From positions 186,001 through 250,000 of IMG/VR virus record IMGVR_UViG_3300010403_000705: a stretch of DNA of 64,000 nucleotides. The stretch is one strand, 5' to 3'. How positions within the stretch are numbered: position 1 is the stretch's first letter; the number at the start of each line of letters is the position of its first letter. Shown here piece after piece: positions 13,607-61,194 of this stretch. A model generated the notes under the pieces. That model saw only the letters and a program-made list of their open reading frames with translations. It was not told the DNA's origin and searched no databases. Position numbers and translations under genes: made by a program.

Positions 13607-14314
13607 ATGAATAAAATATTAAGTATTGTTATACCAGTTTTTAATAAATATAACTTTACTAAATCTTGTTTAAATGATTTAGTAAAGTTACCATCTGATC
13701 ACGAAATAATTATTATTGATAATGGTAGTTCTGATGAAACTCAATCATCATTAGAATTTTCTAAAGAGATAACCTATCATAGAAATAAATATAATCAGGG
13801 TTTTGCTAAAGCTTGTAACATTGGATATTCTATATCTCAGTCATCTAATGTGCTATTTTTAAATAACGACATTAGAGTTAAATCTAATCATAGTGCTTGG
13901 ACACAAATACTAATAGATCATTGCAACACATCACTAGTAGGTCCCACCATGGGGCAACTAGATAACGAATTTAATTTTATTCAAGAAGCTAATCATATAT
14001 TACCTGGTAAATCTTATATGTCAGGTTGGTGCGTGGCTTCATCTAAAGAAATTTGGAAAAAACTAGAAATTCCTTGTGGACCTTTATCATTAAATGATTA
14101 TACTGTACATCAAATTTTTTCTGAGGAATTTGGTTTAGCCTATTTTGAAGATACGGATTTAGGATTCAGAGCTAGAAAATTAAATATTCCAATGAAAGTA
14201 GTACAAATCCCTGTAGTACATTTTGGACAACAGACTAGTAAACAATTGAATACCAGACAATTATATAAAACGGCTAGAGAAATTTTTGTTAAAAAATGGA
14301 AAAATACTAAATGA
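13607..14314 (+). CDS. Glycosyltransferase family 2
   Basis: LSIVIPVFNK, IIIIDNGSSDET, NQGFAKACNIG, VLFLNND, YFEDTDLGFRA. Confidence 0.9.
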   Translation: MNKILSIVIPVFNKYNFTKSCLNDLVKLPSDHEIIIIDNGSSDETQSSLEFSKEITYHRNKYNQGFAKACNIGYSISQSSNVLFLNNDIRVKSNHSAWTQILIDHCNTSLVGPTMGQLDNEFNFIQEANHILPGKSYMSGWCVASSKEIWKKLEIPCGPLSLNDYTVHQIFSEEFGLAYFEDTDLGFRARKLNIPMKVVQIPVVHFGQQTSKQLNTRQLYKTAREIFVKKWKNTK

Positions 14315-14667
14315 TAACTGCCAATAATTTATATATAAGAGATGGTTATTTTGTATTTTTGCCATGGAATAGAAACAATATTAGTAAATCTTGGAGTCGA
14401 AATATAACCTCATCTGGACATATTCCAATAGATCAAATAGTAGTAGTACCTCCTACTGCAGTTAATGTCAATGGTTTTTCTAAAACATTCAATACTATGG
14501 GAGTGGTTAGATTTCCGTATTCTCCTAAATTAAAATATATCGAATACTTCTATAAAAATTTTTATGCTTTACAATACCAATGTTGGACAGAAAAGCATGT
14601 TGAGAACATAAAAAATCTTTTAGATATGATAATAGTTAGATTTGAGAAGTTAATGATTTTTACTTAA
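14311..14667 (+). CDS. Hypothetical protein with shared C-terminal tag (RFEKLMIFT)
   Basis: ATGA overlap with the upstream gene; C-terminus fits the window-wide tag. Confidence 0.7.
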   Translation: MITANNLYIRDGYFVFLPWNRNNISKSWSRNITSSGHIPIDQIVVVPPTAVNVNGFSKTFNTMGVVRFPYSPKLKYIEYFYKNFYALQYQCWTEKHVENIKNLLDMIIVRFEKLMIFT

Positions 14668-14773
14668 ATTTATATAATTGCCTTGCTATATTTTACATCA
14701 TTCTAGCCAATTGACAAACTGCGTAAGTATGTCTAAATTACCAGAAGCTAATTTTATAGAAAGGATGTGTCCC

Positions 14774-15640
14774 ATTCCTGAAGGTGTCGAGGTGCGCATT
14801 AGCGCAGAATTAATTAAGCCATTGGTTATTAATAAAATAGTTGATAAAATTTATGTGGGTAATAACAGTAGATATGTTAATAACCCACCAGAAGGATATA
14901 ACGAATTTAATAAATGTATTAAAAAAATAGAAGATATTGGAAGCACAAAAAGTCATGTGAAAATTTCAGATATAAAAACAAAGGGAAAATTTACATATTG
15001 GACTTTTAATAATAATTGGTATATGTTCTCTACATTTGGAATGACAGGGCAATGGTCACCTAATGAGGGAAAGCATGTTTGTTTTTGTTTTAGATTATAT
15101 GATGAGAAGAATGATATATTTAATTATATATATTTCAATGATCCTAGACATTTTGGAACTATCAGATTTGTGTATTCTGATAAAGAATTAAAAAATAAAC
15201 TTAATGAACTAGGTTGGGATCCGCTTAGTAGTTCTGGATTGAATGATGCTTGGTTAAATTGGATTCATAGCGAATTAATGAAATTAAATAAACCTATTGG
15301 ACAAGCTCTTTTAGACCAAACTATTTTTGCAGGAGTAGGAAACTATATAAGAGCAGAAGCTTTATATCTTGCTAAACTATCTCCCTGGAGAATTTCTAAT
15401 ACCTTATCTAAAAATGAAATAAAACACTTATCACAAGCCATCATAGATGTAATGCAAGAATCTTATAAACATCAAGGAGCTACCTTATTAACATATAAAG
15501 ATTCGTATGGTAATGAAGGAAAGTATTCCTCTTGTTTTAAAGTTTATGGTAGGCATACTGATACATTAGGTAATACAATAAAAACAGAATTGACTCCTGA
15601 AGGAAGAACTATTCATTGGTGCCCTAATATTCAAAAATAA
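14774..15640 (+). CDS. mutM: Fpg/Nei-family DNA glycosylase, proposed ATT start
   Basis: PEGVEVR N-terminal motif, TKGKFTYW, FGMTGQW, FNDPRHFG, H2TH motif LLDQTIFAGVGNYIRAEALY, GRTIHWCPNIQ. AAGGA at 14761-14765 lies 8 nt before ATT-CCT-GAA. Confidence 0.85.
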   Translation: MPEGVEVRISAELIKPLVINKIVDKIYVGNNSRYVNNPPEGYNEFNKCIKKIEDIGSTKSHVKISDIKTKGKFTYWTFNNNWYMFSTFGMTGQWSPNEGKHVCFCFRLYDEKNDIFNYIYFNDPRHFGTIRFVYSDKELKNKLNELGWDPLSSSGLNDAWLNWIHSELMKLNKPIGQALLDQTIFAGVGNYIRAEALYLAKLSPWRISNTLSKNEIKHLSQAIIDVMQESYKHQGATLLTYKDSYGNEGKYSSCFKVYGRHTDTLGNTIKTELTPEGRTIHWCPNIQK

Positions 15641-15659
15641 AAATTGTAGAGGAAATATA

Positions 15660-16022
15660 ATGAATAAATATATCGGTTTGATTTTATTATCTTTGTCTTG
15701 TAGTTGTTCATCATCTAGTCATGATAGGGCAATTATTTCTGCCAATGAAATTCATGAAATAGCAATTTCAGAGGCTAGAATTATTAATACATATTGTGTT
15801 TCAAAATACGAATCATCTAAAACTAAAGAAGATATTGTAGCTGTCGACAAAATTTGTTTACCGGCACAAAAATCTTATCATGCTGTTAAATCAGCTTGGG
15901 AAACTTTAGTATTAGTTATTAAAAATCCTGAGCAAAATAATGTTTCACAAATAGAAAAATCGGTACTAAATTTGTCTAGGTCTTTATTAGAGTTAGAGCA
16001 AATAACAGATGAAATGAGATAA
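15660..16022 (+). CDS. Putative lipoprotein
   Basis: MNKYIGLILLSLSC: short signal peptide with lipobox-like Cys; GAGGA upstream. Confidence 0.6.
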   Translation: MNKYIGLILLSLSCSCSSSSHDRAIISANEIHEIAISEARIINTYCVSKYESSKTKEDIVAVDKICLPAQKSYHAVKSAWETLVLVIKNPEQNNVSQIEKSVLNLSRSLLELEQITDEMR

Positions 16023-16023
16023 C

Positions 16024-16197
16024 ATGAAGCCTGCAGAAATTATAACACTATTAACATTCCTTGATGAACTTTTTAATTTAGGAGGAAAATTAATTATCGC
16101 TGCTATTCAAAAAAATCCAGAATTGCAAGTTGAACCTTTGCCAGAATTGCAAATTGATTTAGCTAGAGCACAGGCTATCGCAAAGATAGAAAAATAA
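16024..16197 (+). CDS. Small hypothetical protein (57 aa, not in ORF track)
   Basis: Translated by hand: MKPAEIITLLTFLDELFNLGGKLIIAAIQKNPELQVEPLPELQIDLARAQAIAKIEK; starts 1 nt after the upstream stop. Confidence 0.6.
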   Translation: MKPAEIITLLTFLDELFNLGGKLIIAAIQKNPELQVEPLPELQIDLARAQAIAKIEK

Positions 16198-16255
16198 TTG
16201 TGGGTAGCTAACATCAATATAATAAAAAAGAATAATTGAAAGGACATAATTTTAA

Positions 16256-21750: not shown

Positions 21751-22080
21751 ATGAAAAATAAAATTATTAAGACATCATATACTATGGGTGCTAGTGTATT
21801 TATAATTAAAGTGTTTCCAGAACTTGAGATAATACAACTCCCTGATATATATGCTAATTCTTCAGATATAACACATAGATTATATAGTAAAAACATAAAT
21901 TTCTTCTTTCTAACAACATTATCAAAACAAGAATTACAACGAGCTTTCTATTCGTTTAATAGTAATATGTTGGCATTGAAATTTCCTAGTTCTTATTTGA
22001 TTATGCCTCTTAATATGATAGATTTATTAGAAATTCTTAAAGAGATAGAGAGATTAAAAAATTTGAAAGCATTTTGGTAA
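21751..22080 (+). CDS. Hypothetical protein with C-terminal tag (RLKNLKAFW)
   Basis: First ORF after the promoter; tag at the stop. Confidence 0.75.
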   Translation: MKNKIIKTSYTMGASVFIIKVFPELEIIQLPDIYANSSDITHRLYSKNINFFFLTTLSKQELQRAFYSFNSNMLALKFPSSYLIMPLNMIDLLEILKEIERLKNLKAFW

Positions 22081-22084: not shown

Positions 22085-22690
22085 ATGATTAATAAAAACT
22101 CAGAATTAACGGGCGGAGAATTATATGATCCGCCTAATGAATATTACAGAAATTTCTTTAAAAAATTCGAAGAAATTGAAACATTAGAAGTACATAAATG
22201 GAAGCCTGTTCATATCTTATCTTACTTCTGTAAGAAGTATAAAGATCATTATAATGTTAATTATCAATTCAAGTTTAATACCTCATCGCCATCAAAATGT
22301 TTTGAAATTTTTCAGATAAAAAAATTGGCAATGCATTTAACAGCCAGTCCTGTTTTGTTGAAAGAATATATAGATTGGATATTTATTGATAAAATAATAA
22401 AAGCAAAAAGAAAATTTACATCCATTTCTTTTATAACTAATGAAACAACAGTCAAAGAATATAAATTTAATGTTTTATTATCAGATAAGAAAAATGCTAA
22501 TATTAACAGGTCAACTTTGTTATCCAATGAATATAAAACAGTATTTGCCCAACTAAACTTCCCAGCTAATACATATGGTGATTTGGCTTTTATATCACAA
22601 ATGCCTGATATGCCTATTGAATTAGTTAAAGCATTTACAATGCTAGAAAGCATGGGATTTGATAAAAATATATTAAAAAAAATAGTATGA
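22085..22690 (+). CDS. Hypothetical protein, possibly replication-associated
   Basis: 201 aa, upstream of DnaC/DnaB-like genes; no motif recognised. Confidence 0.6.
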   Translation: MINKNSELTGGELYDPPNEYYRNFFKKFEEIETLEVHKWKPVHILSYFCKKYKDHYNVNYQFKFNTSSPSKCFEIFQIKKLAMHLTASPVLLKEYIDWIFIDKIIKAKRKFTSISFITNETTVKEYKFNVLLSDKKNANINRSTLLSNEYKTVFAQLNFPANTYGDLAFISQMPDMPIELVKAFTMLESMGFDKNILKKIV

Positions 22691-23067
22691 TGTTATTTAA
22701 AGTTGATAAAAAGATGATGGATGATTTTAATGGAATATCACCCAATAAATTGTTAGATATAATAGGGATTCCATGGACTATGATGTCTGCTGAACCCAAC
22801 TCAATTGAAAAGGATATCATTTCAATACTGAAATTTCAATATAACCATCTGATAATAGTAAAGGGAGGACAAATCCAATATGCTAAAACAACATCAATAG
22901 ATTTTAGTAGAGAGATCGAAACAGATAAGTTAGTAGGTTTCTATATCGACAATTATGATTTGAACCAAACGAACTATTTGTGTTGCATTGTTTTATCATA
23001 CATAAATGATTATGACGAATTAATCAAAACAATGATACGACACGCAAATATGAAAGCATTTTTATGA
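22687..23067 (+). CDS. Hypothetical protein with C-terminal tag (RHANMKAFL)
   Basis: ATGA overlaps at both ends. Confidence 0.75.
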   Translation: MMLFKVDKKMMDDFNGISPNKLLDIIGIPWTMMSAEPNSIEKDIISILKFQYNHLIIVKGGQIQYAKTTSIDFSREIETDKLVGFYIDNYDLNQTNYLCCIVLSYINDYDELIKTMIRHANMKAFL

Positions 23068-23336
23068 GAATTATGAAAAATTATTTTAATAATTTGATAA
23101 ATTTAATATTAAAAAATGAGCCTATTGATATTGAAATTAAGCATGTTAAAAAAGCCTTGAAGAGATATAAAAATGAACTAATTGATATAGAAATAAGCTG
23201 GGACAATTCTGATCAAATTTGTTGTATCGATTGCATGTTCCCGGAAAGAGTTGATTTATTAAAAAAGATTGAGCGAGTTGAATTTCAATTAAATCGTTTG
23301 ATTTATAAAAAAAATAAGCGTAAACAAAATCTATGA
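23064..23336 (+). CDS. Hypothetical protein
   Basis: 90 aa, overlapping start/stop with neighbours. Confidence 0.65.
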   Translation: MRIMKNYFNNLINLILKNEPIDIEIKHVKKALKRYKNELIDIEISWDNSDQICCIDCMFPERVDLLKKIERVEFQLNRLIYKKNKRKQNL

Positions 23337-23725
23337 ATCAGTATATAGAGTTGGAAACTTCTAATATTTTTTTGGGAATTGAACATAAAATAGATATGGC
23401 TTTAATTAAAGAAGGATGCCGTATTTTTAATATACCATATATAGGTGGCGGAATATTTTTCGTACCACAAGAAAAATTATCCTCCATTATTGTATCTACA
23501 ATTGATCTACAAATTAAAAATATCTCAAACACTAAAGATGAGATAGATGCTTTTAAGCAACAAATAGAAAAACAACTTTATGGTAGAGATCATCTTATTA
23601 TATATACTAGACTTAATAAGTATCACCCAAGATATGTATATTATAATGCTGTTGCTATCGCCTCTTCCAACGTTAATGACTTCAAAAAAGTAATGAGAAT
23701 TCACAAAATGAAAGCGTTTTTATGA
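23333..23725 (+). CDS. Hypothetical protein with C-terminal tag (RIHKMKAFL)
   Basis: ATGA overlaps at both ends. Confidence 0.75.
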   Translation: MNQYIELETSNIFLGIEHKIDMALIKEGCRIFNIPYIGGGIFFVPQEKLSSIIVSTIDLQIKNISNTKDEIDAFKQQIEKQLYGRDHLIIYTRLNKYHPRYVYYNAVAIASSNVNDFKKVMRIHKMKAFL

Positions 23726-26229: not shown

Positions 26230-26421
26230 ATGAAATCAGATGAAGAAGTTATTGCTGAAGCAAGCAGAATAGAATACGAAGAAAAAACTGGTAAGTTGTT
26301 TATTGTTTTTGAGGTGATTAATGAAAAATTAAAACAAGACATCAAAAAAAATTGGACAAAAGATATTGAATATAAAATAATAGACAAATGTTTAGTTTTA
26401 AATTTAAATGAAGATGAATGA
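26230..26421 (+). CDS. Hypothetical protein
   Basis: 63-aa ORF in operon. Confidence 0.6.
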   Translation: MKSDEEVIAEASRIEYEEKTGKLFIVFEVINEKLKQDIKKNWTKDIEYKIIDKCLVLNLNEDE

Positions 26422-26758
26422 AAACATATTTGACAATATTAAAGCAATTTGCGCTAATTATCCTAATATTTCTCTATCCATTCAAGATTGGTGCTCTATA
26501 ATGAAAGATAAAAATTCTCTTTGGAAAATGGTAGATATAGTAACAACCAAAGATCTTCTAATGAATGGAAACTATGGTATTTTATTTGGATGTAGAATAA
26601 TTGTTAGCAGGGTTATTCCAGAGGGAAATTTTAGAGTATCAATGAAAATAGATCCTATTAATCCAAGCAAGAAATTAGAAGATTGGTCTCCACAAATGAA
26701 TCTAAAAATCAATTTACATGATATAGAAAGATATCTAAAATTAGTAGCATTTTGGTGA
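26408..26758 (+). CDS. Hypothetical protein with C-terminal tag (RYLKLVAFW)
   Basis: Tag at the stop. Confidence 0.7.
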   Translation: MKMNENIFDNIKAICANYPNISLSIQDWCSIMKDKNSLWKMVDIVTTKDLLMNGNYGILFGCRIIVSRVIPEGNFRVSMKIDPINPSKKLEDWSPQMNLKINLHDIERYLKLVAFW

Positions 26759-26761: not shown

Positions 26762-26950
26762 ATGAATACGACTGTCAATGAATTACCACATTTTATAAAT
26801 GATAAGTTACATAGGCAAGATGGTCCAGCTCTAGTAAATTATCTTTGTCGCAAGGGAGTAAATTATTGGTTTTTTAATGGACTGATAATACCAAACTGTT
26901 CAACACAGGAATATTTTAATAAAGCAATTAAGTTATTAGTTTTCTTGTAA
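26762..26950 (+). CDS. Single LHRxDGPA-repeat protein with C-terminal tag (KAIKLLVFL)
   Basis: DKLHRQDGPALV...YWFFNG, a repeat unit common in large phages and giant viruses. Confidence 0.7.
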   Translation: MNTTVNELPHFINDKLHRQDGPALVNYLCRKGVNYWFFNGLIIPNCSTQEYFNKAIKLLVFL

Positions 26951-27315: not shown

Positions 27316-27445
27316 CTATTGTAAAAAATATATATTTTTTACTTCTATAAAACAAAAAAAATCTGGCAATTGACATTCCAAAAAAAGAATTTAACTTATC
27401 TCTACAGTAGTTAATATCTTAATAAAAATTTTGGAGATGCTTATT

Positions 27446-34244: not shown

Positions 34245-34578
34245 TTTAGTATTTATTTCAAAAAATACCAATAAAGGTATAAAGCTCTTTAGATGTCTAT
34301 ATTGTAATGATAATATAAAAGCTCATTTTTTATCAGAAACTAGATGTTATTTTTACTGTAAAATCTGTAAATGTCAGTTCATAAACCAACACGATATTTT
34401 AGTTGAAATAGATATTAAAACAAAAATTAATAGCAAATTTTATACTGTGAAATTAGATCTAGCAAAGAATCGAACTAATTTAGTTTCAGGTCACATAATA
34501 TATTCATGTGATGAGTGTGTATTGGTTACCCCTCAAAATATAAACAATAAAATACGCATGTGGTTATTAATGCAGTAA
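34231..34578 (+). CDS. Zinc-ribbon protein with C-terminal tag (KIRMWLLMQ); outlier of the 55.7-61.2 kb family
   Basis: CLYC...CKIC, TPQNINNKIRMWLLMQ. Confidence 0.65.
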   Translation: MTSTNLVFISKNTNKGIKLFRCLYCNDNIKAHFLSETRCYFYCKICKCQFINQHDILVEIDIKTKINSKFYTVKLDLAKNRTNLVSGHIIYSCDECVLVTPQNINNKIRMWLLMQ

Positions 34579-34591
34579 AATGGAGAATAGA

Positions 34592-44140: not shown

Positions 44141-44833
44141 ATGAATTTAGATAATTTATTAAACGATGCTATTAAAAATCTATTTGGCATAAACCCTTCC
44201 TTATCTGTAAAAAAAGTCAATCCAAAGAACTTATTAAATACTTCCATAAATGAACATGGCGAGGGAACTAGTTCTTTCGGTAGTAAAGTATTATCTAAAG
44301 CTAGGTCAGACATAGGAGTACATGAAGACTTAGGTAAGAATGATGGTAAAAGAATAAGAGAGTATTTTAAATATTTTAAAATGGGTGGAGGACAGGATTG
44401 GTGTGCGGCGGCAGTATCTGCATGGTTAATAGAAGCTGGCGGCGGACCAATTTCTGGAGCTGTTGGTGCCAGAAATGTTGGCGCTCAATTTGCACAAGCA
44501 GGAAGGTGGGTAGCAAGAGATAAAATATCTGCAAATCACATGATTCCAGGTAATATAGTCGTCTGGAGTCGAGGAGGTCCGGATTCTTGGAAAGGTCATA
44601 TAGGTGTTATAGAATCTTTTGATGGTCGTAATTCTTTCACATCTATCGAAGGAAACTCTGGACCACGCTCTGATGCAGTGGTTGTAAATACTCATTCCAT
44701 TAAAGACGCTAATTTATTAGGAGTAGGAATATTGTCTGATTATGTTCCAAGCTTTTCTAAAAAAAGTTTTGATAAAATTGATAAAATGGCGAATATATAT
44801 TACCAAAAAGCTTTTAAACTTATTAATTTTTGA
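44141..44833 (+). CDS. CHAP-domain peptidoglycan hydrolase
   Basis: QDWCAAAVSAW (Cys), PGNIVVW, GHIGVI (His), SIEGNSG. Confidence 0.8.
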   Translation: MNLDNLLNDAIKNLFGINPSLSVKKVNPKNLLNTSINEHGEGTSSFGSKVLSKARSDIGVHEDLGKNDGKRIREYFKYFKMGGGQDWCAAAVSAWLIEAGGGPISGAVGARNVGAQFAQAGRWVARDKISANHMIPGNIVVWSRGGPDSWKGHIGVIESFDGRNSFTSIEGNSGPRSDAVVVNTHSIKDANLLGVGILSDYVPSFSKKSFDKIDKMANIYYQKAFKLINF

Positions 44834-45303
44834 CAATGATTTGTAAATTCTGTATGACAGCGTTTTCCTTTAATTTTAGGTTGAACACACAATCCTATAG
44901 ATAGTAAATCATTTCTATTATATATCTTCAAATATTTTTTAAAAACAAAAATATTGAAAGGTTCGTTACCATAAGTTACAACAGCAGTCTCTAGTAATGG
45001 ATTTAATTGTTCTTTAATATGATCAATATAATATTCTTTAGAAATAACCCAACTAGGACAATGATAAACATTTATTTGATGTCCACAGGTAACAATACCT
45101 GTCCCAAAACTACAAAGTGTAATATTATTTGATGTTACTATATTATTTAAATGTATCTCTGTCCATTGTTTAGTTTGTCCATCATACATTGAATTTTCAC
45201 GTATATATGGAAATTCAGGATTACTACAAAGAGTTAGAATACCATTTCTATTATAAAAAGAAAAATCTTGATAATTTTTAGCTACTGTTTCATATACCTT
45301 CAT
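44800..45303 (-). CDS. Hypothetical protein with C-terminal tag (KLISLKAFW)
   Basis: Likely start MKVYETV at 45303; 3' end overlaps the CHAP gene antisense. Confidence 0.7.
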   Translation of the reverse strand: MKVYETVAKNYQDFSFYNRNGILTLCSNPEFPYIRENSMYDGQTKQWTEIHLNNIVTSNNITLCSFGTGIVTCGHQINVYHCPSWVISKEYYIDHIKEQLNPLLETAVVTYGNEPFNIFVFKKYLKIYNRNDLLSIGLCVQPKIKGKRCHTEFTNHCQKLISLKAFW

Positions 45304-45940
45304 AAATTTTCTCTTTCGTCCAACCAAAAGCTGATAAGGATAAATTGAATTTTTCAGTTTCATACACTTTTTGTAACATGTTTTTAGCTATTTTACGAAC
45401 TTCTAATTGGGCATGTGTGCTATTCCTTAGTCCTTGAAAATGCATAAAAGATCGAAAATTAAACATAATATCTGCTGTTAGTTGATTAGCATATGGAAGA
45501 TAAAATCTAGCACTCTCTTTAGCACGTTTTTTAGAAATACCAGAATTAATAAGCCTACTTAAACATTCATGATATTTTTTTAAAGATTCTTCGCAATGAT
45601 GAATCAATAGTAATTGCTCATCTTTTTCCCAATCAGAAGGTATATAATATTTATCATCTTTTAATTCTTTATATCTTGGTGATTCAGAATTAAAAGAAAC
45701 TCCAATCCTGTGTTTTAGAATATGTATATGTGTAGCCATATCTGTTGTAATTAAAAAATGCAAACTAGATTTTTCAAAAGGTGTATGATGACCCTCTTCT
45801 CCCAACATATTTAATAATTTATCTACTCTATTTCTTTTTTCCTCATTTATTTCTCTTTTAGTTGATGTCCATGCAGATAGCGCGTGCGTTTCATCTGATC
45901 CGTAAAAACCTACTAATTCTATTTTATTTTCATGTTTCAT
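45290..45940 (-). CDS. thyX: Flavin-dependent thymidylate synthase
   Basis: HHTPFE, KHRIGVSFNSESPRY (RHRx7S-type motif), ESARFYLP, NFRSFMHF..LR, HAQLEVR. Confidence 0.92.
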   Translation of the reverse strand: MKHENKIELVGFYGSDETHALSAWTSTKREINEEKRNRVDKLLNMLGEEGHHTPFEKSSLHFLITTDMATHIHILKHRIGVSFNSESPRYKELKDDKYYIPSDWEKDEQLLLIHHCEESLKKYHECLSRLINSGISKKRAKESARFYLPYANQLTADIMFNFRSFMHFQGLRNSTHAQLEVRKIAKNMLQKVYETEKFNLSLSAFGWTKEKIYEGI

Positions 45941-48764: not shown

Positions 48765-49004
48765 TTACCAAAAAGTCTTCATTTTTAGCATCCTTACAAA
48801 TTCATCTTCTCGGTAGCCTTTATTATCAAAAGATATCAAATATTCCGTTAGATTATTTGATGTTGTTATGAAGAATATGGTTAACTTAGGGGTCTTAAAA
48901 GTAAAAGATTTTACACTTCCCACTTCATGAATACTTTTTATATTACTTTCGGATAAATCACCAATGAATTTTTTTATGTCTGTATGAATGTCATTAATTT
49001 CCAT
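48765..49004 (-). CDS. Hypothetical protein with C-terminal tag (RMLKMKTFW)
   Basis: Abuts the IF-1 stop. Confidence 0.7.
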   Translation of the reverse strand: MEINDIHTDIKKFIGDLSESNIKSIHEVGSVKSFTFKTPKLTIFFITTSNNLTEYLISFDNKGYREDEFVRMLKMKTFW

Positions 49005-50542: not shown

Positions 50543-50824
50543 TCACCAAAATGCTTTCATCTTTTTTATTTTTTCTATTAGTAGTTTCATTTCATCCAAA
50601 TGGCTTGTTATTTTACGTTTATCCTCCATTTCTTCTATTATCGAAAGATCTGAATTTTTTAATTGTTCTATAAGAATACAAAATTCTTGATAATCCTCAA
50701 TTATATTCGTAATGTCATTGGGTGTTCCTACAACTAATTTTTTCTTAGCCATCTCATGAAATGACACTACAACATTTAGTATATGTTTATACGGATTCTT
50801 GATTATTTTTGTCTTTTTTGTCAT
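50543..50824 (-). CDS. Hypothetical protein with C-terminal tag (KIKKMKAFW)
   Basis: Tag at the stop. Confidence 0.72.
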   Translation of the reverse strand: MTKKTKIIKNPYKHILNVVVSFHEMAKKKLVVGTPNDITNIIEDYQEFCILIEQLKNSDLSIIEEMEDKRKITSHLDEMKLLIEKIKKMKAFW

Positions 50825-51297: not shown

Positions 51298-51507
51298 TTA
51301 CCAAAATGCTTTCATATTAAAAAAAGAACTGATTTCCTTGCCTACAAAAATTGCACCATCTTTTTCTATAGAAATTAAATTATTTTTTTCAAAATTAAAC
51401 ATAATGCCACCACTTGTTATAGCAAGGGTATTTTTTTGTTTATTTTCTGCTATATCAAAATCAGAATCACATAAATTGACATATTTTATTAACTCACTCA
51501 ATATCAT
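51298..51507 (-). CDS. Hypothetical protein with C-terminal tag (FFNMKAFW)
   Basis: Stop abuts the SET start. Confidence 0.7.
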   Translation of the reverse strand: MILSELIKYVNLCDSDFDIAENKQKNTLAITSGGIMFNFEKNNLISIEKDGAIFVGKEISSFFNMKAFW

Positions 51508-54500: not shown

Positions 54501-55019
54501 TTATATAAATGCAGTCAATTTTCTTATTGCTTGTAACCATCTGACGATATCTATTAAGACGTCTATAGTAATAGAATTTCCATATTTGAATTGATTAAAA
54601 TATGAATTCCAATTACATTTACTAAATCTAGAATCTTTAGTAGAATCTAATTTATAAAGCATTTTACAATTTCCTCCAGCTTGTGTATGTGTTTTTTCTT
54701 CATAGATACACATGTTCATTTTTAAATCGGACATGTCCGATTTAGTATAATCTGACTTGGTGATTTTAATCAAAAAATCACCAACTTTGATTGTGTTAGA
54801 TTTTAGAATGAAATCTTTTATCTTGTCTTTTTTGACGTCTGTTAAATCAACCATACCTTTATCTTTTGATTTAATTTTCTGTTTAATTTCAGATTCTGCT
54901 GGAATCCATGTCTCTTGATATACATCATCCGATGATGTATCATGATACTGTTGATCGACTAGACTCTTAATTAAATTATAGTATTCTTCAGTAGTAAAAG
55001 ATGTAGATCGTTTTATCAT
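54501..55019 (-). CDS. Hypothetical protein with C-terminal tag (AIRKLTAFI)
   Basis: Tag at the stop. Confidence 0.7.
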   Translation of the reverse strand: MIKRSTSFTTEEYYNLIKSLVDQQYHDTSSDDVYQETWIPAESEIKQKIKSKDKGMVDLTDVKKDKIKDFILKSNTIKVGDFLIKITKSDYTKSDMSDLKMNMCIYEEKTHTQAGGNCKMLYKLDSTKDSRFSKCNWNSYFNQFKYGNSITIDVLIDIVRWLQAIRKLTAFI

Positions 55020-55718: not shown

Positions 55719-55780
55719 GATTTTTGCGATTATGGGTGATTGTGCATAATATATCAAAATTTAATAAACTTATTGACTTT

Positions 55781-56314
55781 ATGAAGATCAATACAAATTG
55801 TGTATTTTGTGGTAATAAAACACCCTTTCTTTTTAAAGAATATATGCACGAAAATGATGAACATCTTACTTATAAGTTAGATAAAGATAATAATGTAAAT
55901 CTACAAATTAGTCAATCTACTTTAAGAAATTTACAAGCTGAAAAATCTGCTTTTGTTGGCGAAGATTTTCCTAATTATTTTGTGAATTGTAATTCACAAA
56001 ATAATAGTTACTCGATCAGTTTACGCACAGATCCTATGAAAACTTGTCCGTTATTTTTTAGTGATTCTGGAACTATTGCTCCTTTTGAATTTGATTTTTT
56101 AAGATTTGAAATAATAAAAAATCAAAATGATTCTACTATTATTGTGATTAATAATTATTTTCATAGAAAAACTTTTTTAATTGACATATCCACAAGCGAG
56201 ACTCATTCTTCCATGAGACGCAGTGATTTTGTTGAGTTACCATTAATAGATTTTGATTTTACTAATAAAGAAAAAATATCACAAAAAATTAAAACTTTAA
56301 TCACATTTTTATAA
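55781..56314 (+). CDS. Zinc-ribbon array member 1 (CVFC; ends KIKTLITFL)
   Basis: Likely start MKINTNC at 55781. Confidence 0.75.
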   Translation: MKINTNCVFCGNKTPFLFKEYMHENDEHLTYKLDKDNNVNLQISQSTLRNLQAEKSAFVGEDFPNYFVNCNSQNNSYSISLRTDPMKTCPLFFSDSGTIAPFEFDFLRFEIIKNQNDSTIIVINNYFHRKTFLIDISTSETHSSMRRSDFVELPLIDFDFTNKEKISQKIKTLITFL

Positions 56315-56895
56315 TGTTTTATAAAATACAAGACTTACTAGAGTATAAAAAATATTGTTCTATTTGTGATTACCCACTTTTGGCTATATTAAAAGATCGT
56401 AGTAGTGGAATACCAAATATAAATGTGAAGTTAAACAAAAATATATTCAAATTCAGATTACAATATACTTCAGCAAGTGATTACTTAAATGAAATTTGCA
56501 TTTTAAATGTAGATACTAATGAGTTAAGCATTCTCAACAAGGATAATGATTTATTAATCATACCGGTGGTAGAAAGAATTTTTGGATATGCTTGTGTGGC
56601 AGTAGAACTGCATTGCGTAAATAATAAATGCAAATATAATTATTACGTATGTACCACTTTCTTAAAACCAATTGCAAATAAGGATATTATAATTATTAAT
56701 CCAATTCTTATTGATATAGATTGCTATAATATCTCACATTTTTGGATTCAAAATGATTATTTAAATAAAATTACTAATATTTTTTCTACCTCTAAGCCGC
56801 AAAATAAACCCATTTCGGTTCCTTTATTGGAAATCGACCCCAATAACAAAAATAAAATTTTTAATAGAATTAAAACGATTGTTAATTTTTCTTGA
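56314..56895 (+). CDS. Zinc-ribbon array member 2 (CSIC; ends RIKTIVNFS)
   Basis: TAATG overlap with the upstream gene. Confidence 0.78.
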   Translation: MFYKIQDLLEYKKYCSICDYPLLAILKDRSSGIPNINVKLNKNIFKFRLQYTSASDYLNEICILNVDTNELSILNKDNDLLIIPVVERIFGYACVAVELHCVNNKCKYNYYVCTTFLKPIANKDIIIINPILIDIDCYNISHFWIQNDYLNKITNIFSTSKPQNKPISVPLLEIDPNNKNKIFNRIKTIVNFS

Positions 56896-57641
56896 AAAGA
56901 AAGATACCTGTCATGCAAGATTTTTTATTGTCTAATAAAGTATGTCCTATTTGTCAGAATCCATTAACCTTATTCATGAAATGGTCTAGCCATGATCTGG
57001 TTATTAATAAACTTTTTAAAGGATATGAAACAAAAGATAATACATATCAATTTAAAGAATACATTGCAGCTGCGCCAATTGCGGAAAATAATTTTCATTC
57101 TTCAGATGAAATGTTGAGAAATGTGAAAGTTCTGATGATTCTAAAATTTATTAATAATGAATGCAATTTTCAATTTAATTCTCTAATAGCAGAGAAAATG
57201 GCTAAAGAACAGGAAGAATTATTTTTTTATTATATATGTAATCCTGCCGGTATTAAACCAGATAATATGATTAATATTTATGAAGCGTGTTATTATAGAG
57301 CCACTCCTCTTATGAAATTTATTGAGGGAGATTCTAGTTTATTGAAAATAAAACAATTAGACGAAAAATATAATGTCATTAATAGTTTAGAGTCTTTTAC
57401 TATAAAAGACGAAACTACTGATTCTGAATTAAAAAAGATATATATAGTTTATTTAAATTATCTTGATGAAAAACTTTCTTTTTATTACTACACGGCTACT
57501 GCTGAACAAGAAGCGTCAGAACATTATAATCCTAATATTTTTGTGGGTGAAATTCCTATTCCCAAAAATGGATTAAATCTTGATTTAAACGCCAGAGATA
57601 AATTAATTTCTAGAATGGATTCTTGGATTCTTATGTCATAA
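56892..57641 (+). CDS. Zinc-ribbon array member 3 (CPIC; ends RMDSWILMS)
   Basis: TTGA overlap; start could be 56913. Confidence 0.75.
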   Translation: MKRKIPVMQDFLLSNKVCPICQNPLTLFMKWSSHDLVINKLFKGYETKDNTYQFKEYIAAAPIAENNFHSSDEMLRNVKVLMILKFINNECNFQFNSLIAEKMAKEQEELFFYYICNPAGIKPDNMINIYEACYYRATPLMKFIEGDSSLLKIKQLDEKYNVINSLESFTIKDETTDSELKKIYIVYLNYLDEKLSFYYYTATAEQEASEHYNPNIFVGEIPIPKNGLNLDLNARDKLISRMDSWILMS

Positions 57642-57714: not shown

Positions 57715-58800
57715 ATGCAAACAATAAATCAACTATTAGAATCTTGTAAAAATAAATTGGTATTTCTGCAAAATATGATACCTATCACGCAAAATCAAAA
57801 TAGGTTAAAAGAAATAGATGATTTGGTAAGTAATAGTAATATCTGGGCTTCTCCTAAAGAAGCCGCTTCTCTAATGAAAGAACGTCAAAAAGTTTCTGAC
57901 ATATTAAAGAAATTGTCTTCTTATCAAGATCAGATTAATTTTTACATAGAGTGTCAACAGTATATGCCAGAAGAATTAATAAAAATTTCTTCACAGGTAG
58001 AAGATTTGCATAAAGATATTTCTTTGTTTGAATTTAAACAGATGATGAATGATCCTATAGATGATAGTCCAGCTATTCTTACTATTAATGCTGGTGCTGG
58101 CGGATTAGAAGCTGCCAATTGGACCAGTATGTTATTGCGTATGTATTCTAGATATGCAGATTCAAATAAGTTTAAACTAGAAATGCTAGATATGAAACCC
58201 TCAGAAGAACATGCAAGTATTTGTACTGACTGTGTTTCTATAAGAGTGGAAGGTCCGTACGCATATGGATTTTTAAAAGGTGAGGCGGGAGTTCATAGAT
58301 TAATAAGAAATTCTCCGTTCAATTCAGGAGATGCTAGGCATACTTCTTTTGCTGCCGTGGCTGTTTTACCAGATATTGAAGACAAATTATCAATTGATAT
58401 TCAAATAAATGAGAAAGATATAGAAATTACTACTATGCGCGCCTCTGGTGCAGGTGGACAAAATGTTAATAAAGTAGAAAGTGCTGTTAGATTAAAACAC
58501 ATTCCAACAGGAATTGTAATTAATTCTCGTTCTGAAAGAGATCAGCATACCAATAGAAAAATAGCTATGAAGATTCTGAAAGCAAAACTTTATGAAATAG
58601 AAATGCAAAAACAGAATAAAGAGAAAGAAAAATATTTCTCCAGCATGCAAGATAATTCTTTTGGTCATCAAATAAGGTCTTATATTTTATTTCCAACTCA
58701 GATGGTCAAAGATCATCGAACAAATTTTGAAGTAAGAGATGCGGAAAAAGTCTTAGATGGAGATATTGAAGAATTCATTATGGCTTATTTACATTCTTAA
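57715..58800 (+). CDS. prfB: Peptide chain release factor 2, no programmed frameshift
   Basis: [14 protein letters not shown] (SPF), [17 protein letters not shown] (GGQ), QIRSY. Confidence 0.93.
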
Positions 58801-58805
58801 TCAAA

Positions 58806-59381
58806 ATGATAAGTAATTTTACCATCAAAGATTTTATTAATTATAATAATCCATGTTTTTGCTGCGGAAATTCAGTTTCACTAAAAATGTTTTCTAGCGC
58901 AGATGAAATTATGGGCAGTGGAATAGTCCTAATTCCTGCCGTATATCAAAATGCACTAGAAGTGGATTTGGAAATTACCTATCTTTCAACTTTAAAATTA
59001 AAAATTTATCCAAAAACTAATAAATTTATTTCTTCGAGTCATGATAGCTTGACAAAATACTTACAAGGACGTAAACTGTCTTTGATAAGCAGATGTGATG
59101 GTTGTAGTACATTCGTTAAAAGTTTGAGTTTGGAATTTAATTTGGATAGAGAATTTATAAAACCTCTTTCTATTGAAGAAGAAATGTTGTTTTTATACGA
59201 TAAAGATTTTTTATTTAGGGTTAGATCTTTATTTAAAAATAATTACAGCGAATTGCTTATTATTAAATATAAAAAACCTTCCGAAACGTTCAAATTAACA
59301 ATGCCTCTTCAGCCAAGAAGTAAATTTAAAAATACACAACAGCTTCTAAAAAAAATAAAAACTTTAATGCTTTTCTCTTAA
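58806..59381 (+). CDS. Zinc-ribbon array member 4 (CFCC...CDGC; ends KIKTLMLFS)
   Basis: N-terminus IKDFINYNNPC resembles member 2 (IQDLLEYKKYC). Confidence 0.78.
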   Translation: MISNFTIKDFINYNNPCFCCGNSVSLKMFSSADEIMGSGIVLIPAVYQNALEVDLEITYLSTLKLKIYPKTNKFISSSHDSLTKYLQGRKLSLISRCDGCSTFVKSLSLEFNLDREFIKPLSIEEEMLFLYDKDFLFRVRSLFKNNYSELLIIKYKKPSETFKLTMPLQPRSKFKNTQQLLKKIKTLMLFS

Positions 59382-59425: not shown

Positions 59426-59767
59426 ATGAATAGTTCACACAATTGTCCGATTTGTAAAACTCTTATGATGGAAGATAAATATACTTTTCCAATCCCAGAA
59501 TCAACTGATTTGATCTGTCGTCAAGATAATCATTTTTTTGTAAAAAGAATTAGCCCAGTTACCAATCAAGTTTCGGAATTGAAAATTAAACTTCAGTGCG
59601 GAGAAGAAGAGCTGTATCTTAAAATAAATTATAATAGAAATTACACTGATGTATGGGCGACCGCAAATAATTCAAAACATATTAGAATTCCATATATCTT
59701 GATGTCAGATTTTGAAGATTTTAATAAAATTAAACATAAAATAAAAACTTGCCTTCTTTTTTCTTAA
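59426..59767 (+). CDS. Zinc-ribbon array member 5 (CPIC...C..DNH; ends KIKTCLLFS)
   Basis: AAGGA upstream. Confidence 0.78.
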   Translation: MNSSHNCPICKTLMMEDKYTFPIPESTDLICRQDNHFFVKRISPVTNQVSELKIKLQCGEEELYLKINYNRNYTDVWATANNSKHIRIPYILMSDFEDFNKIKHKIKTCLLFS

Positions 59768-59769
59768 TT

Positions 59770-60111
59770 ATGCAAATGCCAATTAAATGCCCAATCTGTT
59801 CCGGACCCATGAATAATGATTTTCTTCCATCTTCCGGCGGAAAAGAATATCTAAGGAAGTGTTGCGAAGTAAAACTAAATCATAAAATTATTTATACTTC
59901 TTCCATAAATCATGATGAGGTGCAGCAGTTTGATCTAATATTATCACTTGATAAGTTATCAGTAGCAAGATTTGTTTGGTCACCAAATCATAAAATACTT
60001 AATGTATATAAAAATAACACTCATACAACCAATATTCCATATTTTGAACCGCAATTAAATAACTTAAAAGCTCTAAAAGACAAGTTAAAATTGTATTTAT
60101 TATTCTTATAG
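59770..60111 (+). CDS. Zinc-ribbon array member 6 (CPIC...CC...NH; ends KLKLYLLFL)
   Basis: Likely start MQMPIKC at 59770. Confidence 0.75.
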   Translation: MQMPIKCPICSGPMNNDFLPSSGGKEYLRKCCEVKLNHKIIYTSSINHDEVQQFDLILSLDKLSVARFVWSPNHKILNVYKNNTHTTNIPYFEPQLNNLKALKDKLKLYLLFL

Positions 60112-60131
60112 CTGATGTTATATGAAATGCC

Positions 60132-60455
60132 ATGAAAGAGTTTTCCTATTGCCCAATTTGTGCGAATAAATTAAAAAGCCGACTGTTTAAGGATAACATT
60201 AAACTTCTTTCTTGCCAGGAAGGAGTGGCACATTACATTTCTTTTAAATTGCAAGACCAACAAATGTCAAACATGACATTATACTTAGATAATTATTCGT
60301 ACTTGGAAATGGATTTTTTAAAACAAATATCTACCTATTACTATGATCCTTTAAATGGGATGGCTAAGCTGGTGATTCCTAAAATTATAGAACCGGATTT
60401 TCCGCAACTCAAAAATTTAAAAGAAAAACTATTAAAGTATGTGTTGTTTACATAA
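60132..60455 (+). CDS. Zinc-ribbon array member 7 (CPIC...C...AH; ends KLLKYVLFT)
   Basis: Same layout as neighbours. Confidence 0.78.
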   Translation: MKEFSYCPICANKLKSRLFKDNIKLLSCQEGVAHYISFKLQDQQMSNMTLYLDNYSYLEMDFLKQISTYYYDPLNGMAKLVIPKIIEPDFPQLKNLKEKLLKYVLFT

Positions 60456-60497
60456 TCTTTTGGTAATTTACCAGTCTCTTGCATCTGTTGTTTTTAT

Positions 60498-60860
60498 ATG
60501 AAATGTGTGTTTTGTGATAATGATTGTGTCATACAAGCCAGAAGTAATTCCGCTTGTGAAAAGTATATGAAATTTGCGATGTTTTATCCTATTTGTAAAA
60601 TATGTCAAATATCCTATAAAGTCAACTGGTCAAAAAGAGAATATATATCTGCGATTGTTTTTATGATCAAAGATCAAGAAACTTGTCCAACTATTGTTAC
60701 TAATCATCTGATTATAGACGTACAAGAAAATTCTACCAAACTATTCGGTCGTGCCAATTTTGATAAACCTATTATTGATCTTTCTTATGCGATGGACATT
60801 CATCCAAATAATTTGTATGAACGTTTAACAAAATTAAAGAAATTAATTTTATTCTCATAA
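60498..60860 (+). CDS. Zinc-ribbon array member 8 (CVFC...CKIC; ends KLKKLILFS)
   Basis: Same layout as neighbours. Confidence 0.78.
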   Translation: MKCVFCDNDCVIQARSNSACEKYMKFAMFYPICKICQISYKVNWSKREYISAIVFMIKDQETCPTIVTNHLIIDVQENSTKLFGRANFDKPIIDLSYAMDIHPNNLYERLTKLKKLILFS

Positions 60861-60861
60861 T

Positions 60862-61194
60862 ATGAATTGTTATTACTGTAAACAAAATATTGATGTTATG
60901 TCATTGTGGTCTTATAGTAAAAATACTGTATTTTGTGAAAAATGTAAAGCTTATCAGAGTTATCACCAAGGATATTTATATAATATTTGTTTTATGTTCG
61001 ATGAAAATAAATCAGTCTCTGATCAGTCTACGAAAAAAGGTTACTGGATCGTAATCAATGTTGTGAGAAATCAATTCTCATTAGAGTTAAATAACTCAAT
61101 AATTATTAAGGATCTGCCCGAAGCTGATAAAATCACTCCTGCTAATGTACAAGAAACACTGTATAGACTATTGAGGTTAAAAGCGTATCTTTAA
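60862..61194 (+). CDS. Zinc-ribbon array member 9 (CYYC...CEKC; ends RLLRLKAYL)
   Basis: Zinc-ribbon body carrying the KAF-type tag variant. Confidence 0.78.
   Translation: MNCYYCKQNIDVMSLWSYSKNTVFCEKCKAYQSYHQGYLYNICFMFDENKSVSDQSTKKGYWIVINVVRNQFSLELNNSIIIKDLPEADKITPANVQETLYRLLRLKAYL

What the first reader, a model, noticed from the sequence alone, without database searches (positions are those of the whole stretch)
14311..61194. A stop-anchored C-terminal peptide tag shared by 23 mostly unrelated small proteins
SEEN: aligned on the stop codon, the last 9 residues are RFEKLMIFT (14311), RLKNLKAFW (21751), RHANMKAFL (22687), RIHKMKAFL (23333), RYLKLVAFW (26408), KAIKLLVFL (26762), KIRMWLLMQ (34231), RFKKVKSFI (35110), KFNRLKAFV (35656), KLISLKAFW (44800-), RMLKMKTFW (48765-), KIKKMKAFW (50543-), SFFNMKAFW (51298-), AIRKLTAFI (54501-), KIKTLITFL (55781), RIKTIVNFS (56314), RMDSWILMS (56892), KIKTLMLFS (58806), KIKTCLLFS (59426), KLKLYLLFL (59770), KLLKYVLFT (60132), KLKKLILFS (60498), RLLRLKAYL (60862). 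K/R is at -9 in 21 of 23, F at -2 in 20 of 23, and -5 is always hydrophobic, with no spacing variation. The tagged bodies differ (zinc ribbons, an LHRxDGPA repeat, unknowns) and lie on both strands. No recognisable enzyme or structural protein has the tag. Codons vary synonymously (gca/gcg/gct, aaa/aag, TAA/TGA/TAG), so selection looks protein-level. KNOWN: C-terminal peptides dock T4 gp43/gp33/gp55 on the gp45 clamp, and the hydrophobic-x-x-F-W core resembles a PIP box; C-terminal peptides also act as AAA+ protease degrons and PDZ/TPR ligands. INFERENCE: this is a portable addressing system that plugs a large, variable set of accessory proteins into one hub (sliding clamp, protease adaptor, subcellular compartment or export route). 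A nascent-peptide effect on termination/re-initiation is also possible, since many tagged genes overlap or abut the next start and the phage carries RF2 and IF-1. I know of no description of this tag.
Basis: partly seen in the sequence, partly recalled or inferred. Interest (0 to 1): 0.93.

Follow-up and report, generated by a model that had tools for sequence, protein, structure and literature searches.

The report
Stop-flush C-terminal helix motif in huge phages
About a quarter of the small genes in this stretch of an uncultured 433-kb phage, and in its relatives, end in the same 9-residue peptide exactly at the stop codon; it is real, selected at the protein level and undescribed, but nearly half its carriers are one expanded zinc-ribbon family and its binding partner is unknown.

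Summary
The motif is [KR]-h-x-[KTN]-[LMYW]-x-x-F-x-COOH. It is absent from 239 spurious AT-rich ORF ends, from reversed sequence and from 1482 ORFs of unrelated viral contigs. In 1143 ORFs pooled from the window and about 30 related huge-phage loci (GC 25-44%), 280 carry the core flush with the stop. Only 4 carry it 1-15 residues earlier. Codons vary synonymously, and in orthologues the tail is more conserved than the body.

"Mostly unrelated" is only partly right. Ten of the 23 belong to one tandemly amplified zinc-ribbon superfamily that surrounds a phage RF2 gene in every relative. There the motif is the family's last helix. The other 13 fall into many families with no detectable homology beyond the tail.

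AlphaFold places the motif at the end of a confident 14-20-residue helix. Pfam, PHROGs, PDB, cellular genomes and the literature hold nothing like it.

Best reading (about 0.45): a carboxy-terminus-anchored docking helix read by one shared, probably phage-encoded, receptor. A purely structural helix, a degron and membrane targeting remain rivals. No receptor was identified.

The parts
14311..14667 (+). Tagged ORF, 118 aa, tail RFEKLMIFT; group A (no zinc ribbon, singleton body)
21751..22080 (+). Tagged ORF, 109 aa, tail RLKNLKAFW; group A
22687..23067 (+). Tagged ORF, 126 aa, tail RHANMKAFL; group A, orthologues in L128-L130 keep the tail
23333..23725 (+). Tagged ORF, 130 aa, tail RIHKMKAFL; group A
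26408..26758 (+). Tagged ORF, 116 aa, tail RYLKLVAFW; group A
26762..26950 (+). Tagged ORF, 62 aa, HRxDGPA (MORN-like) hairpin repeats plus tail KAIKLLVFL; group A
34231..34578 (+). Tagged ORF, 115 aa, CxxC motifs, tail KIRMWLLMQ; member of the zinc-ribbon superfamily (group B)
35110..35430 (+). Tagged ORF, 106 aa, tail RFKKVKSFI; group A, related to L128-L130 and L133 proteins
35656..36141 (+). Tagged ORF, 161 aa, tail KFNRLKAFV; group A
44800..45363 (-). Tagged ORF, 187 aa at most (true start uncertain: overlaps 45290-45940), tail KLISLKAFW; group A. Its tag codons overlap the 3' end of the convergent CHAP-domain gene 44141-44833
48765..49004 (-). Tagged ORF, 79 aa, tail RMLKMKTFW; group A
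50543..50824 (-). Tagged ORF, 93 aa, helix-rich-looking body, tail KIKKMKAFW; group A
51298..51507 (-). Tagged ORF, 69 aa, tail SFFNMKAFW; group A
54501..55019 (-). Tagged ORF, 172 aa, tail AIRKLTAFI; group A. AF2 model pLDDT 70.5 with tail helix 152-171; related to the cluster whose tails end ...RLDRLKAFL
55724..56314 (+). Tagged ORF, 196 aa (177 aa from the ATG at 55781), tail KIKTLITFL; zinc-ribbon superfamily, large form
56314..56895 (+). Tagged ORF, 193 aa, tail RIKTIVNFS; zinc-ribbon superfamily, large form
56892..57641 (+). Tagged ORF, 249 aa, tail RMDSWILMS; zinc-ribbon superfamily, large form
58806..59381 (+). Tagged ORF, 191 aa, tail KIKTLMLFS; zinc-ribbon superfamily, large form. 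AF2 model pLDDT 90.5, tail helix 177-190
59426..59767 (+). Tagged ORF, 113 aa, N-terminal CPIC ribbon, tail KIKTCLLFS; zinc-ribbon superfamily, small form
59749..60111 (+). Tagged ORF, 120 aa (113 aa from the ATG at 59770), CPIC ribbon, tail KLKLYLLFL; small form
60132..60455 (+). Tagged ORF, 107 aa, CPIC ribbon, tail KLLKYVLFT; small form
60498..60860 (+). Tagged ORF, 120 aa, N-terminal Cys motifs, tail KLKKLILFS; small-form-like (assigned by Cys motifs and tail type, singleton at BLAST level)
60862..61194 (+). Tagged ORF, 110 aa, N-terminal CxxC, tail RLLRLKAYL (A-type tail on a ribbon body); small-form-like
57715..58800 (+). Untagged RF2-type release factor (PCRF + RF-1 domains, SPF motif). 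It lies inside the zinc-ribbon array here and in all 22 related loci; context, not a carrier

Best explanation
The 9-residue motif is the carboxy-terminal end of a 14-20-residue alpha-helix. I read it as a carboxy-terminus-anchored docking helix that one shared receptor recognises. The receptor is probably phage-encoded, because the motif is confined to this clade of 340-480-kb phages. Its main carrier is a hugely amplified zinc-ribbon family. The same tail has also spread to, or been acquired by, at least ten other small accessory-protein families. In this model the variable bodies supply specificity and the constant tail plugs them into a common partner. That partner could be a loading site in the capsid or another compartment, a replication or transcription hub, or a protease or adaptor.

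Shown: the motif, its flush anchoring, protein-level selection, its distribution, and which bodies are homologous.
Inferred: that the free C-terminus is part of what is recognised, that a single receptor exists, and that it is phage-encoded.
Unknown: the receptor.
For: - Flush anchoring: 280 of 284 near-terminal occurrences end exactly at the stop. The zinc-ribbon expansion of Bacillus phage G has its own conserved C-terminal helix followed by a variable 0-6-residue extension.
- The tail is the best-conserved part of the protein: 67% versus 43% identity, higher in 48 of 51 orthologue pairs. Orthologues rarely lose it: most low-scoring members of mixed clusters are degenerate tails, and a handful have none.
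- Synonymous codon turnover, and persistence across 25-44% GC.
- Group A tails sit on bodies that HHalign does not relate. Of 136 A-A cluster pairs only 4 align beyond the tail, and no A-B pair does once c115, a misclassified large-form group B cluster, is set aside. One group A body looks all-helical by eye and another carries MORN-like hairpins.
- A-type tails also occur on ribbon bodies, so the two flavours form one continuum.
- No tagged protein has an enzyme or structural Pfam or PHROG family: 136 cluster representatives were scanned. Untagged neighbours are readily annotated.
- The motif was not found in unrelated viral contigs. The single variant K-M-K-A-F-W-stop was not found at any ORF end in representative genomes of 185,579 cellular species.
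Against: - No receptor was found or tested.
- AF2 gives the tail helix high confidence (pLDDT 85-93 in the ribbon protein, 84-90 in 54501). That suggests it packs on its own body rather than dangling for a partner. I could not inspect coordinates.
- 21 of 29 tagged clusters with at least 3 members are one superfamily, so much of the motif's abundance is plain paralogy.
- The group A alignments are thin (2-13 sequences), so very remote common ancestry cannot be excluded.
- The tail profile gave no hit at E <= 0.001 against 1.84 billion proteins, so the global distribution is untested.
Confidence: 0.45

Rival explanations
1. It is a purely structural or self-association helix. All carriers would descend from one ancient small-protein family, with group A diverged beyond recognition. 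The conserved tail caps or packs on the protein's own sheet, or mediates homo-oligomerisation. No external receptor exists.
For: - The tail helix has high pLDDT in both AF2 models.
- 21 of 29 tagged clusters form one superfamily even with the last 14 residues removed.
- Foldseek links small and large ribbon forms in BFVD.
- Many bodies look like strands followed by the terminal helix.
- Phage G has an analogous ribbon family with its own conserved last helix.
Against: - A packing helix has no obvious need for flush anchoring with essentially no length variation in about 280 proteins; the phage G family varies by 0-6 residues.
- The tail is more conserved than the cores.
- Group A bodies show no profile similarity to each other or to group B, and differ in predicted class.
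Confidence: 0.25
2. It is a C-terminal degron or protease tether. The non-polar, basic-flanked C-terminus would deliver these accessory proteins, or targets bound by their bodies, to an AAA+ or tail-specific protease. The result would be timed turnover or protease saturation.
For: - The last five residues are largely non-polar, especially in group B (L-x-L-F-S type).
- Flush anchoring fits recognition of a free carboxylate.
- From established knowledge (not tested here): non-polar C-termini destabilise bacterial proteins, and ClpX reads ssrA-like and MuA-like basic-then-hydrophobic C-termini.
Against: - Conservation spans 9-12 residues with a near-invariant K/R at -9 and F at -2, more than known protease tags need.
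- The tail is a confidently folded helix, not an unstructured end.
- The one variant scanned was absent from cellular genomes.
- No protease was linked to it. The proteases next to the arrays in relatives appear to be secreted lipoproteins.
Confidence: 0.12
3. It is a membrane-targeting amphipathic helix of the MinD or FtsA kind, bringing small proteins to the inner membrane.
For: - The tail is a basic plus hydrophobic terminal helix with F and W or L at the end, and the last 12 residues carry a median net charge of +2.
Against: - The Eisenberg hydrophobic moment of the last 11 or 18 residues (0.26-0.30) equals that of untagged C-termini (0.23-0.30).
- In group B the last five residues are hydrophobic all round the helix.
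- Position-specific conservation (F in 58 of 62 families, K/R in 56 of 62) and flush anchoring exceed what lipid binding requires.
Confidence: 0.06
4. It acts as a nascent peptide. The last residues, sitting in the ribosomal exit tunnel at the stop codon, would modulate termination or re-initiation on the next, often overlapping, gene, possibly with the phage RF2.
For: - 40% of tagged genes end in an ATGA stop/start overlap, against 13% of untagged small genes.
- RF2 lies inside the array in all relatives.
- IF-1 and a methionine aminopeptidase are also encoded.
Against: - The TGA excess disappears once ATGA overlaps are removed (p = 0.055).
- 60% of tagged genes have no such overlap, and 74 of 312 have no downstream gene within 200 nt.
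- All three stop codons follow the tail.
- The motif is part of a folded helix conserved in the mature protein.
- Tandem duplication alone explains the coupling.
Confidence: 0.04

Closest known systems
C-terminal cargo-loading (targeting) peptides of encapsulins, and encapsulation helices of bacterial microcompartments
   Same: A short conserved terminal peptide or helix is shared by unrelated cargo proteins and read by one shell protein. Encapsulin shells have the phage HK97 capsid fold. This comparison rests on my own knowledge.
   Different: Those peptides sit on flexible linkers and their cargo genes lie next to the shell gene. Here the tail continues a confident helix and the genes lie among replication and nucleotide-metabolism genes. 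No shell interaction was tested, and the sequence motif is different.
Clamp-binding C-terminal peptides (T4/RB69 gp43, gp33 and gp55 on gp45; PIP box; bacterial beta-clamp motif)
   Same: Extreme C-terminal position, with hydrophobic-x-x-aromatic spacing (-5, -2) as in a PIP box.
   Different: The PIP Q position (-8) is hydrophobic in 90% of families. The last residue is aromatic in only about a third: W in 20 of 62, otherwise L or S. The T4-type peptides are acidic and hydrophobic (from memory), whereas this tail is basic. About a quarter of local ORFs carry it, far more than known clamp clients in phages.
Lineage-specific expansion of about 35 zinc-ribbon proteins in Bacillus phage G (Iyer et al. 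2021, PMC7824862)
   Same: Huge AT-rich phage; tandem arrays of proteins of about 110 aa with an N-terminal CPxC ribbon and a conserved C-terminal helix.
   Different: The phage G tail motif is different (YWKENDRYLAK-type) and is followed by 0-6 variable residues. No ORF of the ribbon expansion scores with the PSSM; one unrelated ORF in the first 50 kb scores 8.9, which I take as a chance hit. HHalign similarity is only 63-80% probability, over the ribbon alone. The phages are not close relatives.
Poxvirus ankyrin/PRANC and other viral F-box-type multigene families
   Same: Variable bodies plus a constant C-terminal module that plugs into one hub, amplified in tandem in a large virus. This comparison rests on my own knowledge.
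   Different: PRANC is a domain of about 40-50 residues that binds eukaryotic Skp1. Here the conserved part is 9-12 residues, the host is prokaryotic and no hub is known.

Membership tests
PIP-box / sliding-clamp-binding peptide | Gln at motif position 1 (here -8) | tested here: not met
   -8 is hydrophobic in 90% of 62 family representatives (I19, L13, F10, Y7, M6); Q is not among the common residues
PIP-box / sliding-clamp-binding peptide | Aliphatic residue at position 4 and two aromatics at positions 7-8 (here -5, -2, -1) | tested here: inconclusive
   -5 is hydrophobic in 97% and -2 is F in 58 of 62. But -1 is W in 20, L in 17 and S in 12 of 62
PIP-box / sliding-clamp-binding peptide | Binds the clamp's hydrophobic pocket | not testable with these tools
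   No complex prediction is available, and no clamp gene lies in the window
MinD/FtsA-type membrane-targeting sequence | Terminal helix with a high hydrophobic moment | tested here: not met
   muH is 0.26-0.30 for tagged tails versus 0.23-0.30 for untagged C-termini
Encapsulin-type cargo-loading peptide | Same short terminal peptide on unrelated cargo proteins | tested here: met
   Group A tails sit on more than 10 families unrelated by HHalign
Encapsulin-type cargo-loading peptide | Peptide separated from the cargo by a flexible linker | tested here: not met
   The tail is the end of a continuous helix: 177-190 at pLDDT 85-93, and 152-171 at pLDDT 84-90. There is no Gly/Pro/Ser enrichment at -10 to -20
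Encapsulin-type cargo-loading peptide | Binds the interior of an HK97-fold shell; cargo found in particles | not testable with these tools
   Needs virion proteomics or complex modelling
Hydrophobic C-terminal degron (ssrA-, MuA- or Tsp-type) | Non-polar extreme C-terminus exposed to a protease | tested here: inconclusive
   The last five residues are mostly non-polar in group B and K-A-F-W-like in group A, but they are predicted to be folded in a helix
One paralogous family whose last helix is the motif | Bodies homologous once the tail is removed | tested here: inconclusive
   Met for group B: 21 of 29 clusters join at HHalign probability >=80, against 1 of 500 and 0 of 400 in controls. Not met for group A: 4 related pairs among 136, and no A-B link
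Phage G zinc-ribbon expansion | Sequence homology, including the C-terminal helix motif | tested here: not met
   The tail motif is different. HHalign gives 63-80% probability over about 35 ribbon columns only. tblastn of a ribbon protein against 50,697 phage records found no match

The most novel reading that the evidence does not exclude
A clade of uncultured 340-480-kb phages uses a proteome-scale, carboxylate-anchored C-terminal address code. One phage-encoded receptor would read the same 9-residue helix end on hundreds of fast-evolving small proteins. It would load them into a compartment (capsid interior or a replication body), or use them as interchangeable adaptors that bring host targets to a common machine.
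Probability: 0.35. Interest if true: 0.85.

Novelty: new variant of a known kind. Interest (0 to 1): 0.66.

Why it matters
Huge phages carry hundreds of small genes of unknown function. A shared, strictly C-terminal tag would sort a large part of that dark proteome into one functional class. It would also give an experimental handle: tag-dependent pull-down, localisation or stability assays. If a single receptor reads the tag, this would be the first phage example of a broad peptide address system comparable to encapsulin cargo peptides or secretion signals. The tag could be reused as a portable targeting tool. Even under the modest reading, the finding defines a very large zinc-ribbon multigene family wrapped around a phage RF2 gene. 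It also yields a simple sequence rule for recognising this phage clade.

Tried and rejected
- Profile of the last 32 residues (A1) against 1.84 billion representative proteins: no hit at E <= 0.001 and nothing listed.
- The same profile against PDB sequences: only zinc-finger noise.
- Scan of representative cellular genomes for K-M-K-A-F-W-stop: 36 matches, none at an ORF end. Only this one variant was scanned.
- Megablast and tblastn against 50,697 phage records: no close isolate.
- The search for homologous proteins on the 191-aa ribbon protein: only 2 hits in 5.8 billion clusters, so I did not repeat it.
- Foldseek against PDB for both models: nothing significant; TM about 0.2, PUR-repeat and NanoLuc noise. 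My idea of a shared PC4/PUR-like four-strand-plus-helix fold for all carriers is therefore unsupported. Helical-looking bodies such as 50543 also contradict it.
- DNA-level signal (for example a reverse-strand MotA-box-like AAATGCTTT): rejected, because codons vary synonymously and the motif persists at 25-44% GC.
- TGA stop enrichment as a link to RF2: explained by ATGA overlaps.
- Sigma-70 promoter and terminator scan to time the genes: 121 sites versus 108 expected, uninformative.
- Literature searches: no description of the motif.
- Model coordinates could not be inspected, so how the tail helix packs is inferred from pLDDT alone.

Full report
**What the window is**

The window is 30% GC. 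It corresponds to about positions 186,001-250,000 of IMG/VR contig 3300010403_000705, which is 432,844 bp long. No cultured phage is close to it.

Untagged neighbours are easy to annotate:
- a tubulin/TubZ homologue, a UvsW-like helicase, DnaB, both ribonucleotide reductase subunits and PIN-PhoH;
- a sigma-70-like factor, Fpg, two DEDD exonucleases, GMP reductase/IMPDH and a dUTPase-like protein;
- a SET domain, a CHAP domain and several glycosyltransferases;
- IF-1, a methionine aminopeptidase and an RF2-type release factor (SPF motif).

**Check of the observation**

All 23 quoted 9-mers end ORFs at the stated places. I built a 12-column PSSM anchored on the stop and scored it leave-one-out. 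Nineteen of the 23 reach 5 bits or more. The controls at the same threshold were:

| Control set | Reaching >=5 bits |
|---|---|
| Internal 12-mers of window proteins | 14 of 18,795 |
| Untagged gene ends in the window | 0 of 61 |
| Non-gene AT-rich ORF ends in the window | 0 of 239 |
| ORFs of the reversed window | 0 of 104 |
| ORFs in 107 unrelated viral loci (chance DNA-pattern hits) | 0 of 1482 |

**The motif elsewhere**

A DNA pattern for K-M-K-A-F-W-stop led to other huge-phage contigs of 340-480 kb. So did searches with the DnaB and RF2 proteins.
- Loci around RF2 carry 5-25 tagged ORFs per 21 kb. One 8.5-kb fragment has 17 tagged ORFs out of 19.
- Pooling the window and related loci gives 1143 unique ORFs, of which 312 are tagged.
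- 32 of 45 loci have at least two tags, across 25-44% GC.
- Loci whose DnaB is only about 25% identical have none.

With one representative per body cluster (62 families), the motif is:

| Position | Residue(s) | Frequency |
|---|---|---|
| -9 | K/R | 90% |
| -8 | hydrophobic | 90% |
| -6 | K/T/N | 73% (K 33, T 6, N 6 of 62) |
| -5 | hydrophobic | 97% |
| -2 | F | 58 of 62 |
| -1 | W, L or S | 79% (W 20, L 17, S 12 of 62) |

A weaker heptad-like hydrophobic pattern runs back to -18.

**Anchoring and selection**

The 9-mer core is flush with the C-terminus in 280 proteins. It lies 1-15 residues upstream in only 4.

F(-2) is coded by TTT 155 times and TTC 134 times. K/R(-9) uses seven codons. 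Within-cluster pairs show 2548 synonymous tail-codon differences. Among orthologue pairs the last nine residues are 67% identical against 43% for the body, and higher in 48 of 51 pairs. In mixed clusters, most low-scoring members are degenerate versions of the same tail, not losses. Selection therefore acts on the protein and on its exact end.

**Are the bodies unrelated?**

Only in part. I removed the last 14 residues and ran HHalign between cluster alignments. At probability 80 or more, 21 of 29 tagged clusters joined into one superfamily. Controls gave 1 of 500 tagged-untagged pairs and 0 of 400 untagged-untagged pairs.

This superfamily (group B) has an N-terminal CxxC ribbon and invariant cysteines. 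It comes in small (about 110-130 aa) and large (about 190-235 aa) forms. It is tandemly amplified around the RF2 gene in every relative. In the window I assign ten ORFs to it: 34231, 55724, 56314, 56892, 58806, 59426, 59749, 60132, 60498 and 60862. Eight are placed by sequence clustering. 60498 and 60862 are placed by their N-terminal Cys motifs and tail type only.

The remaining 13 (group A, mostly K-A-F-[WLIV] tails) are different. Among 17 clusters, only 4 of 136 pairs align beyond the tail, and none aligns to group B. Their bodies range from helix-rich-looking (50543) to MORN-like hairpin repeats (26762) and mixed alpha/beta (54501). Tails of the A type also occur on ribbon bodies, so the two flavours grade into each other. 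The group A alignments are thin, so very remote homology cannot be excluded.

**Structure**

- AF2 on the 191-aa ribbon protein (16-sequence alignment) gives pLDDT 90.5 and pTM 0.85. The fold has two strand-meander-plus-helix halves, and the tail forms helix 177-190 at pLDDT 85-93.
- The 172-aa group A protein 54501 gives pLDDT 70.5, with the tail in helix 152-171 among its best-predicted parts.
- Foldseek finds nothing in the PDB. In BFVD it finds only uncharacterised paralogues from an uncultured phage.
- The tail is thus the end of an ordered helix, not a peptide on a flexible linker. I could not see coordinates, so whether it is buried is inferred.

**Tests of specific readings**

- Membrane targeting: the hydrophobic moment of the tails equals that of untagged ends, so this is not supported.
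- DNA-condensing basic proteins: body pI is about 6.3-6.7, so this is not supported.
- PIP box: the Q position is not met and the last aromatic is met only in part.
- Termination or re-initiation: tagged genes use TGA more often (60% versus 36%, p = 5e-12). This is because 40% of them end in an ATGA overlap with the next gene, against 13% of untagged genes. Without those genes the difference is not significant. Tandem duplication explains that.
- Known families: Pfam and PHROGs on 136 tagged representatives give only weak zinc-ribbon hits. The literature searches found no description.
- Closest published analogue: the roughly 35-copy zinc-ribbon expansion of Bacillus phage G (PMC7824862). I read five of its members. 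They share the architecture but have a different terminal helix motif, followed by 0-6 variable residues. This is a useful contrast to the flush anchoring seen here.

**Interpretation**

Four features are most simply explained by a docking helix whose free C-terminus is part of what a single receptor reads:
- strict flush anchoring;
- a tail more conserved than the body;
- presence on unrelated bodies;
- restriction to one phage clade.

The zinc-ribbon family would be its main and probably original carrier (confidence 0.45). The chief rival is a purely structural or self-association helix inherited by descent (0.25); the high pLDDT and the large share of paralogy favour it. A degron or protease tether (0.12), membrane targeting (0.06) and a nascent-peptide effect (0.04) are less likely. 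No receptor was identified, and that is the main gap.

**Verdict**

The motif is undescribed, and I rate it a new variant of the known kind "C-terminal targeting or docking peptide". Interest 0.66.

Noticed in passing
window 61300-64000, continuing to window-equivalent ~68700 in L123 (L123 coordinate = window coordinate - 47714); also L124 14000-21068: Directly after the last tagged gene the GC content jumps from about 30% to 44-63%. In the relative L124 it reaches 57-66%, against about 32% elsewhere on that contig. The island is therefore conserved in position across the clade. The stretch 61.3-63.9 kb has no convincing ORFs but holds dispersed 32-39-nt repeats with TTGG...CCAAGG ends. A 459-aa ORF (L123 16265-17641) is 32% identical to a 443-aa ORF in L124 and matches no Pfam or NCBIfam family. 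Rfam and tRNA scans found nothing.
   Followed up: partly
L124 13416-14138 (-) and L188 20348-21043 (-): In two relatives the gene right after the zinc-ribbon array, on the opposite strand, is a protease with a lipoprotein-like signal peptide. One is a trypsin-like serine peptidase (Trypsin_2, E = 1.5e-15). The other is an M10/matrixin-like metallopeptidase (E = 1.5e-4, below Pfam's gathering score). They are unrelated to each other, and I found no counterpart in the window.
   Followed up: partly
window 57715-58800 (+), 49005-49223 (-), 33438-34244 (+): The phage encodes an RF2-type release factor (SPF motif, no frameshift site noticed), IF-1 and a methionine aminopeptidase. The RF2 gene is embedded in the zinc-ribbon array in all 22 related loci found.
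   Followed up: partly
window 50821-51297 (-): A SET-domain protein (E = 1.3e-9) lies in an operon-like run between two tagged genes (50543 and 51298). The tags are lysine-rich. No link was tested.
   Followed up: no
window 44800-44833: Two convergent genes overlap by 34 nt: the CHAP-domain gene 44141-44833 (+) and the tagged ORF 44800-45363 (-). The tag codons are therefore also read on the other strand, where the CHAP protein ends ...QKAFKLINF.
   Followed up: no
window 34580-34630 (+): The two best internal PSSM hits in the window are at the N-terminus of ORF 34580 (MENRMKKYLSMLIFL...), immediately after the tagged gene 34231. This is probably a signal or membrane segment rather than a displaced tag.
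   Followed up: no
window 26998-27315 (+) and 27431-27634 (+): Two neighbouring small ORFs both begin MPTYLYKCP..., an FmdB-type Zn_ribbon_8. They are an untagged duplicated zinc ribbon distinct from group B.
   Followed up: no
window 55065-55718 (+): An untagged 217-aa protein is conserved next to the large ribbon genes in every relative. phmmer linked it weakly to the small ribbon proteins. It matches no Pfam or NCBIfam family. It is worth testing as a partner of the array.
   Followed up: partly
L200 (Bacillus phage G) 25800-33110: The zinc-ribbon expansion of phage G (gp32, gp34, gp35, gp37, gp46) has its own conserved C-terminal helix motif (YWKENDRYLAK-type). This suggests that 'ribbon plus conserved last helix' recurs as a design in huge phages.
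   Followed up: partly
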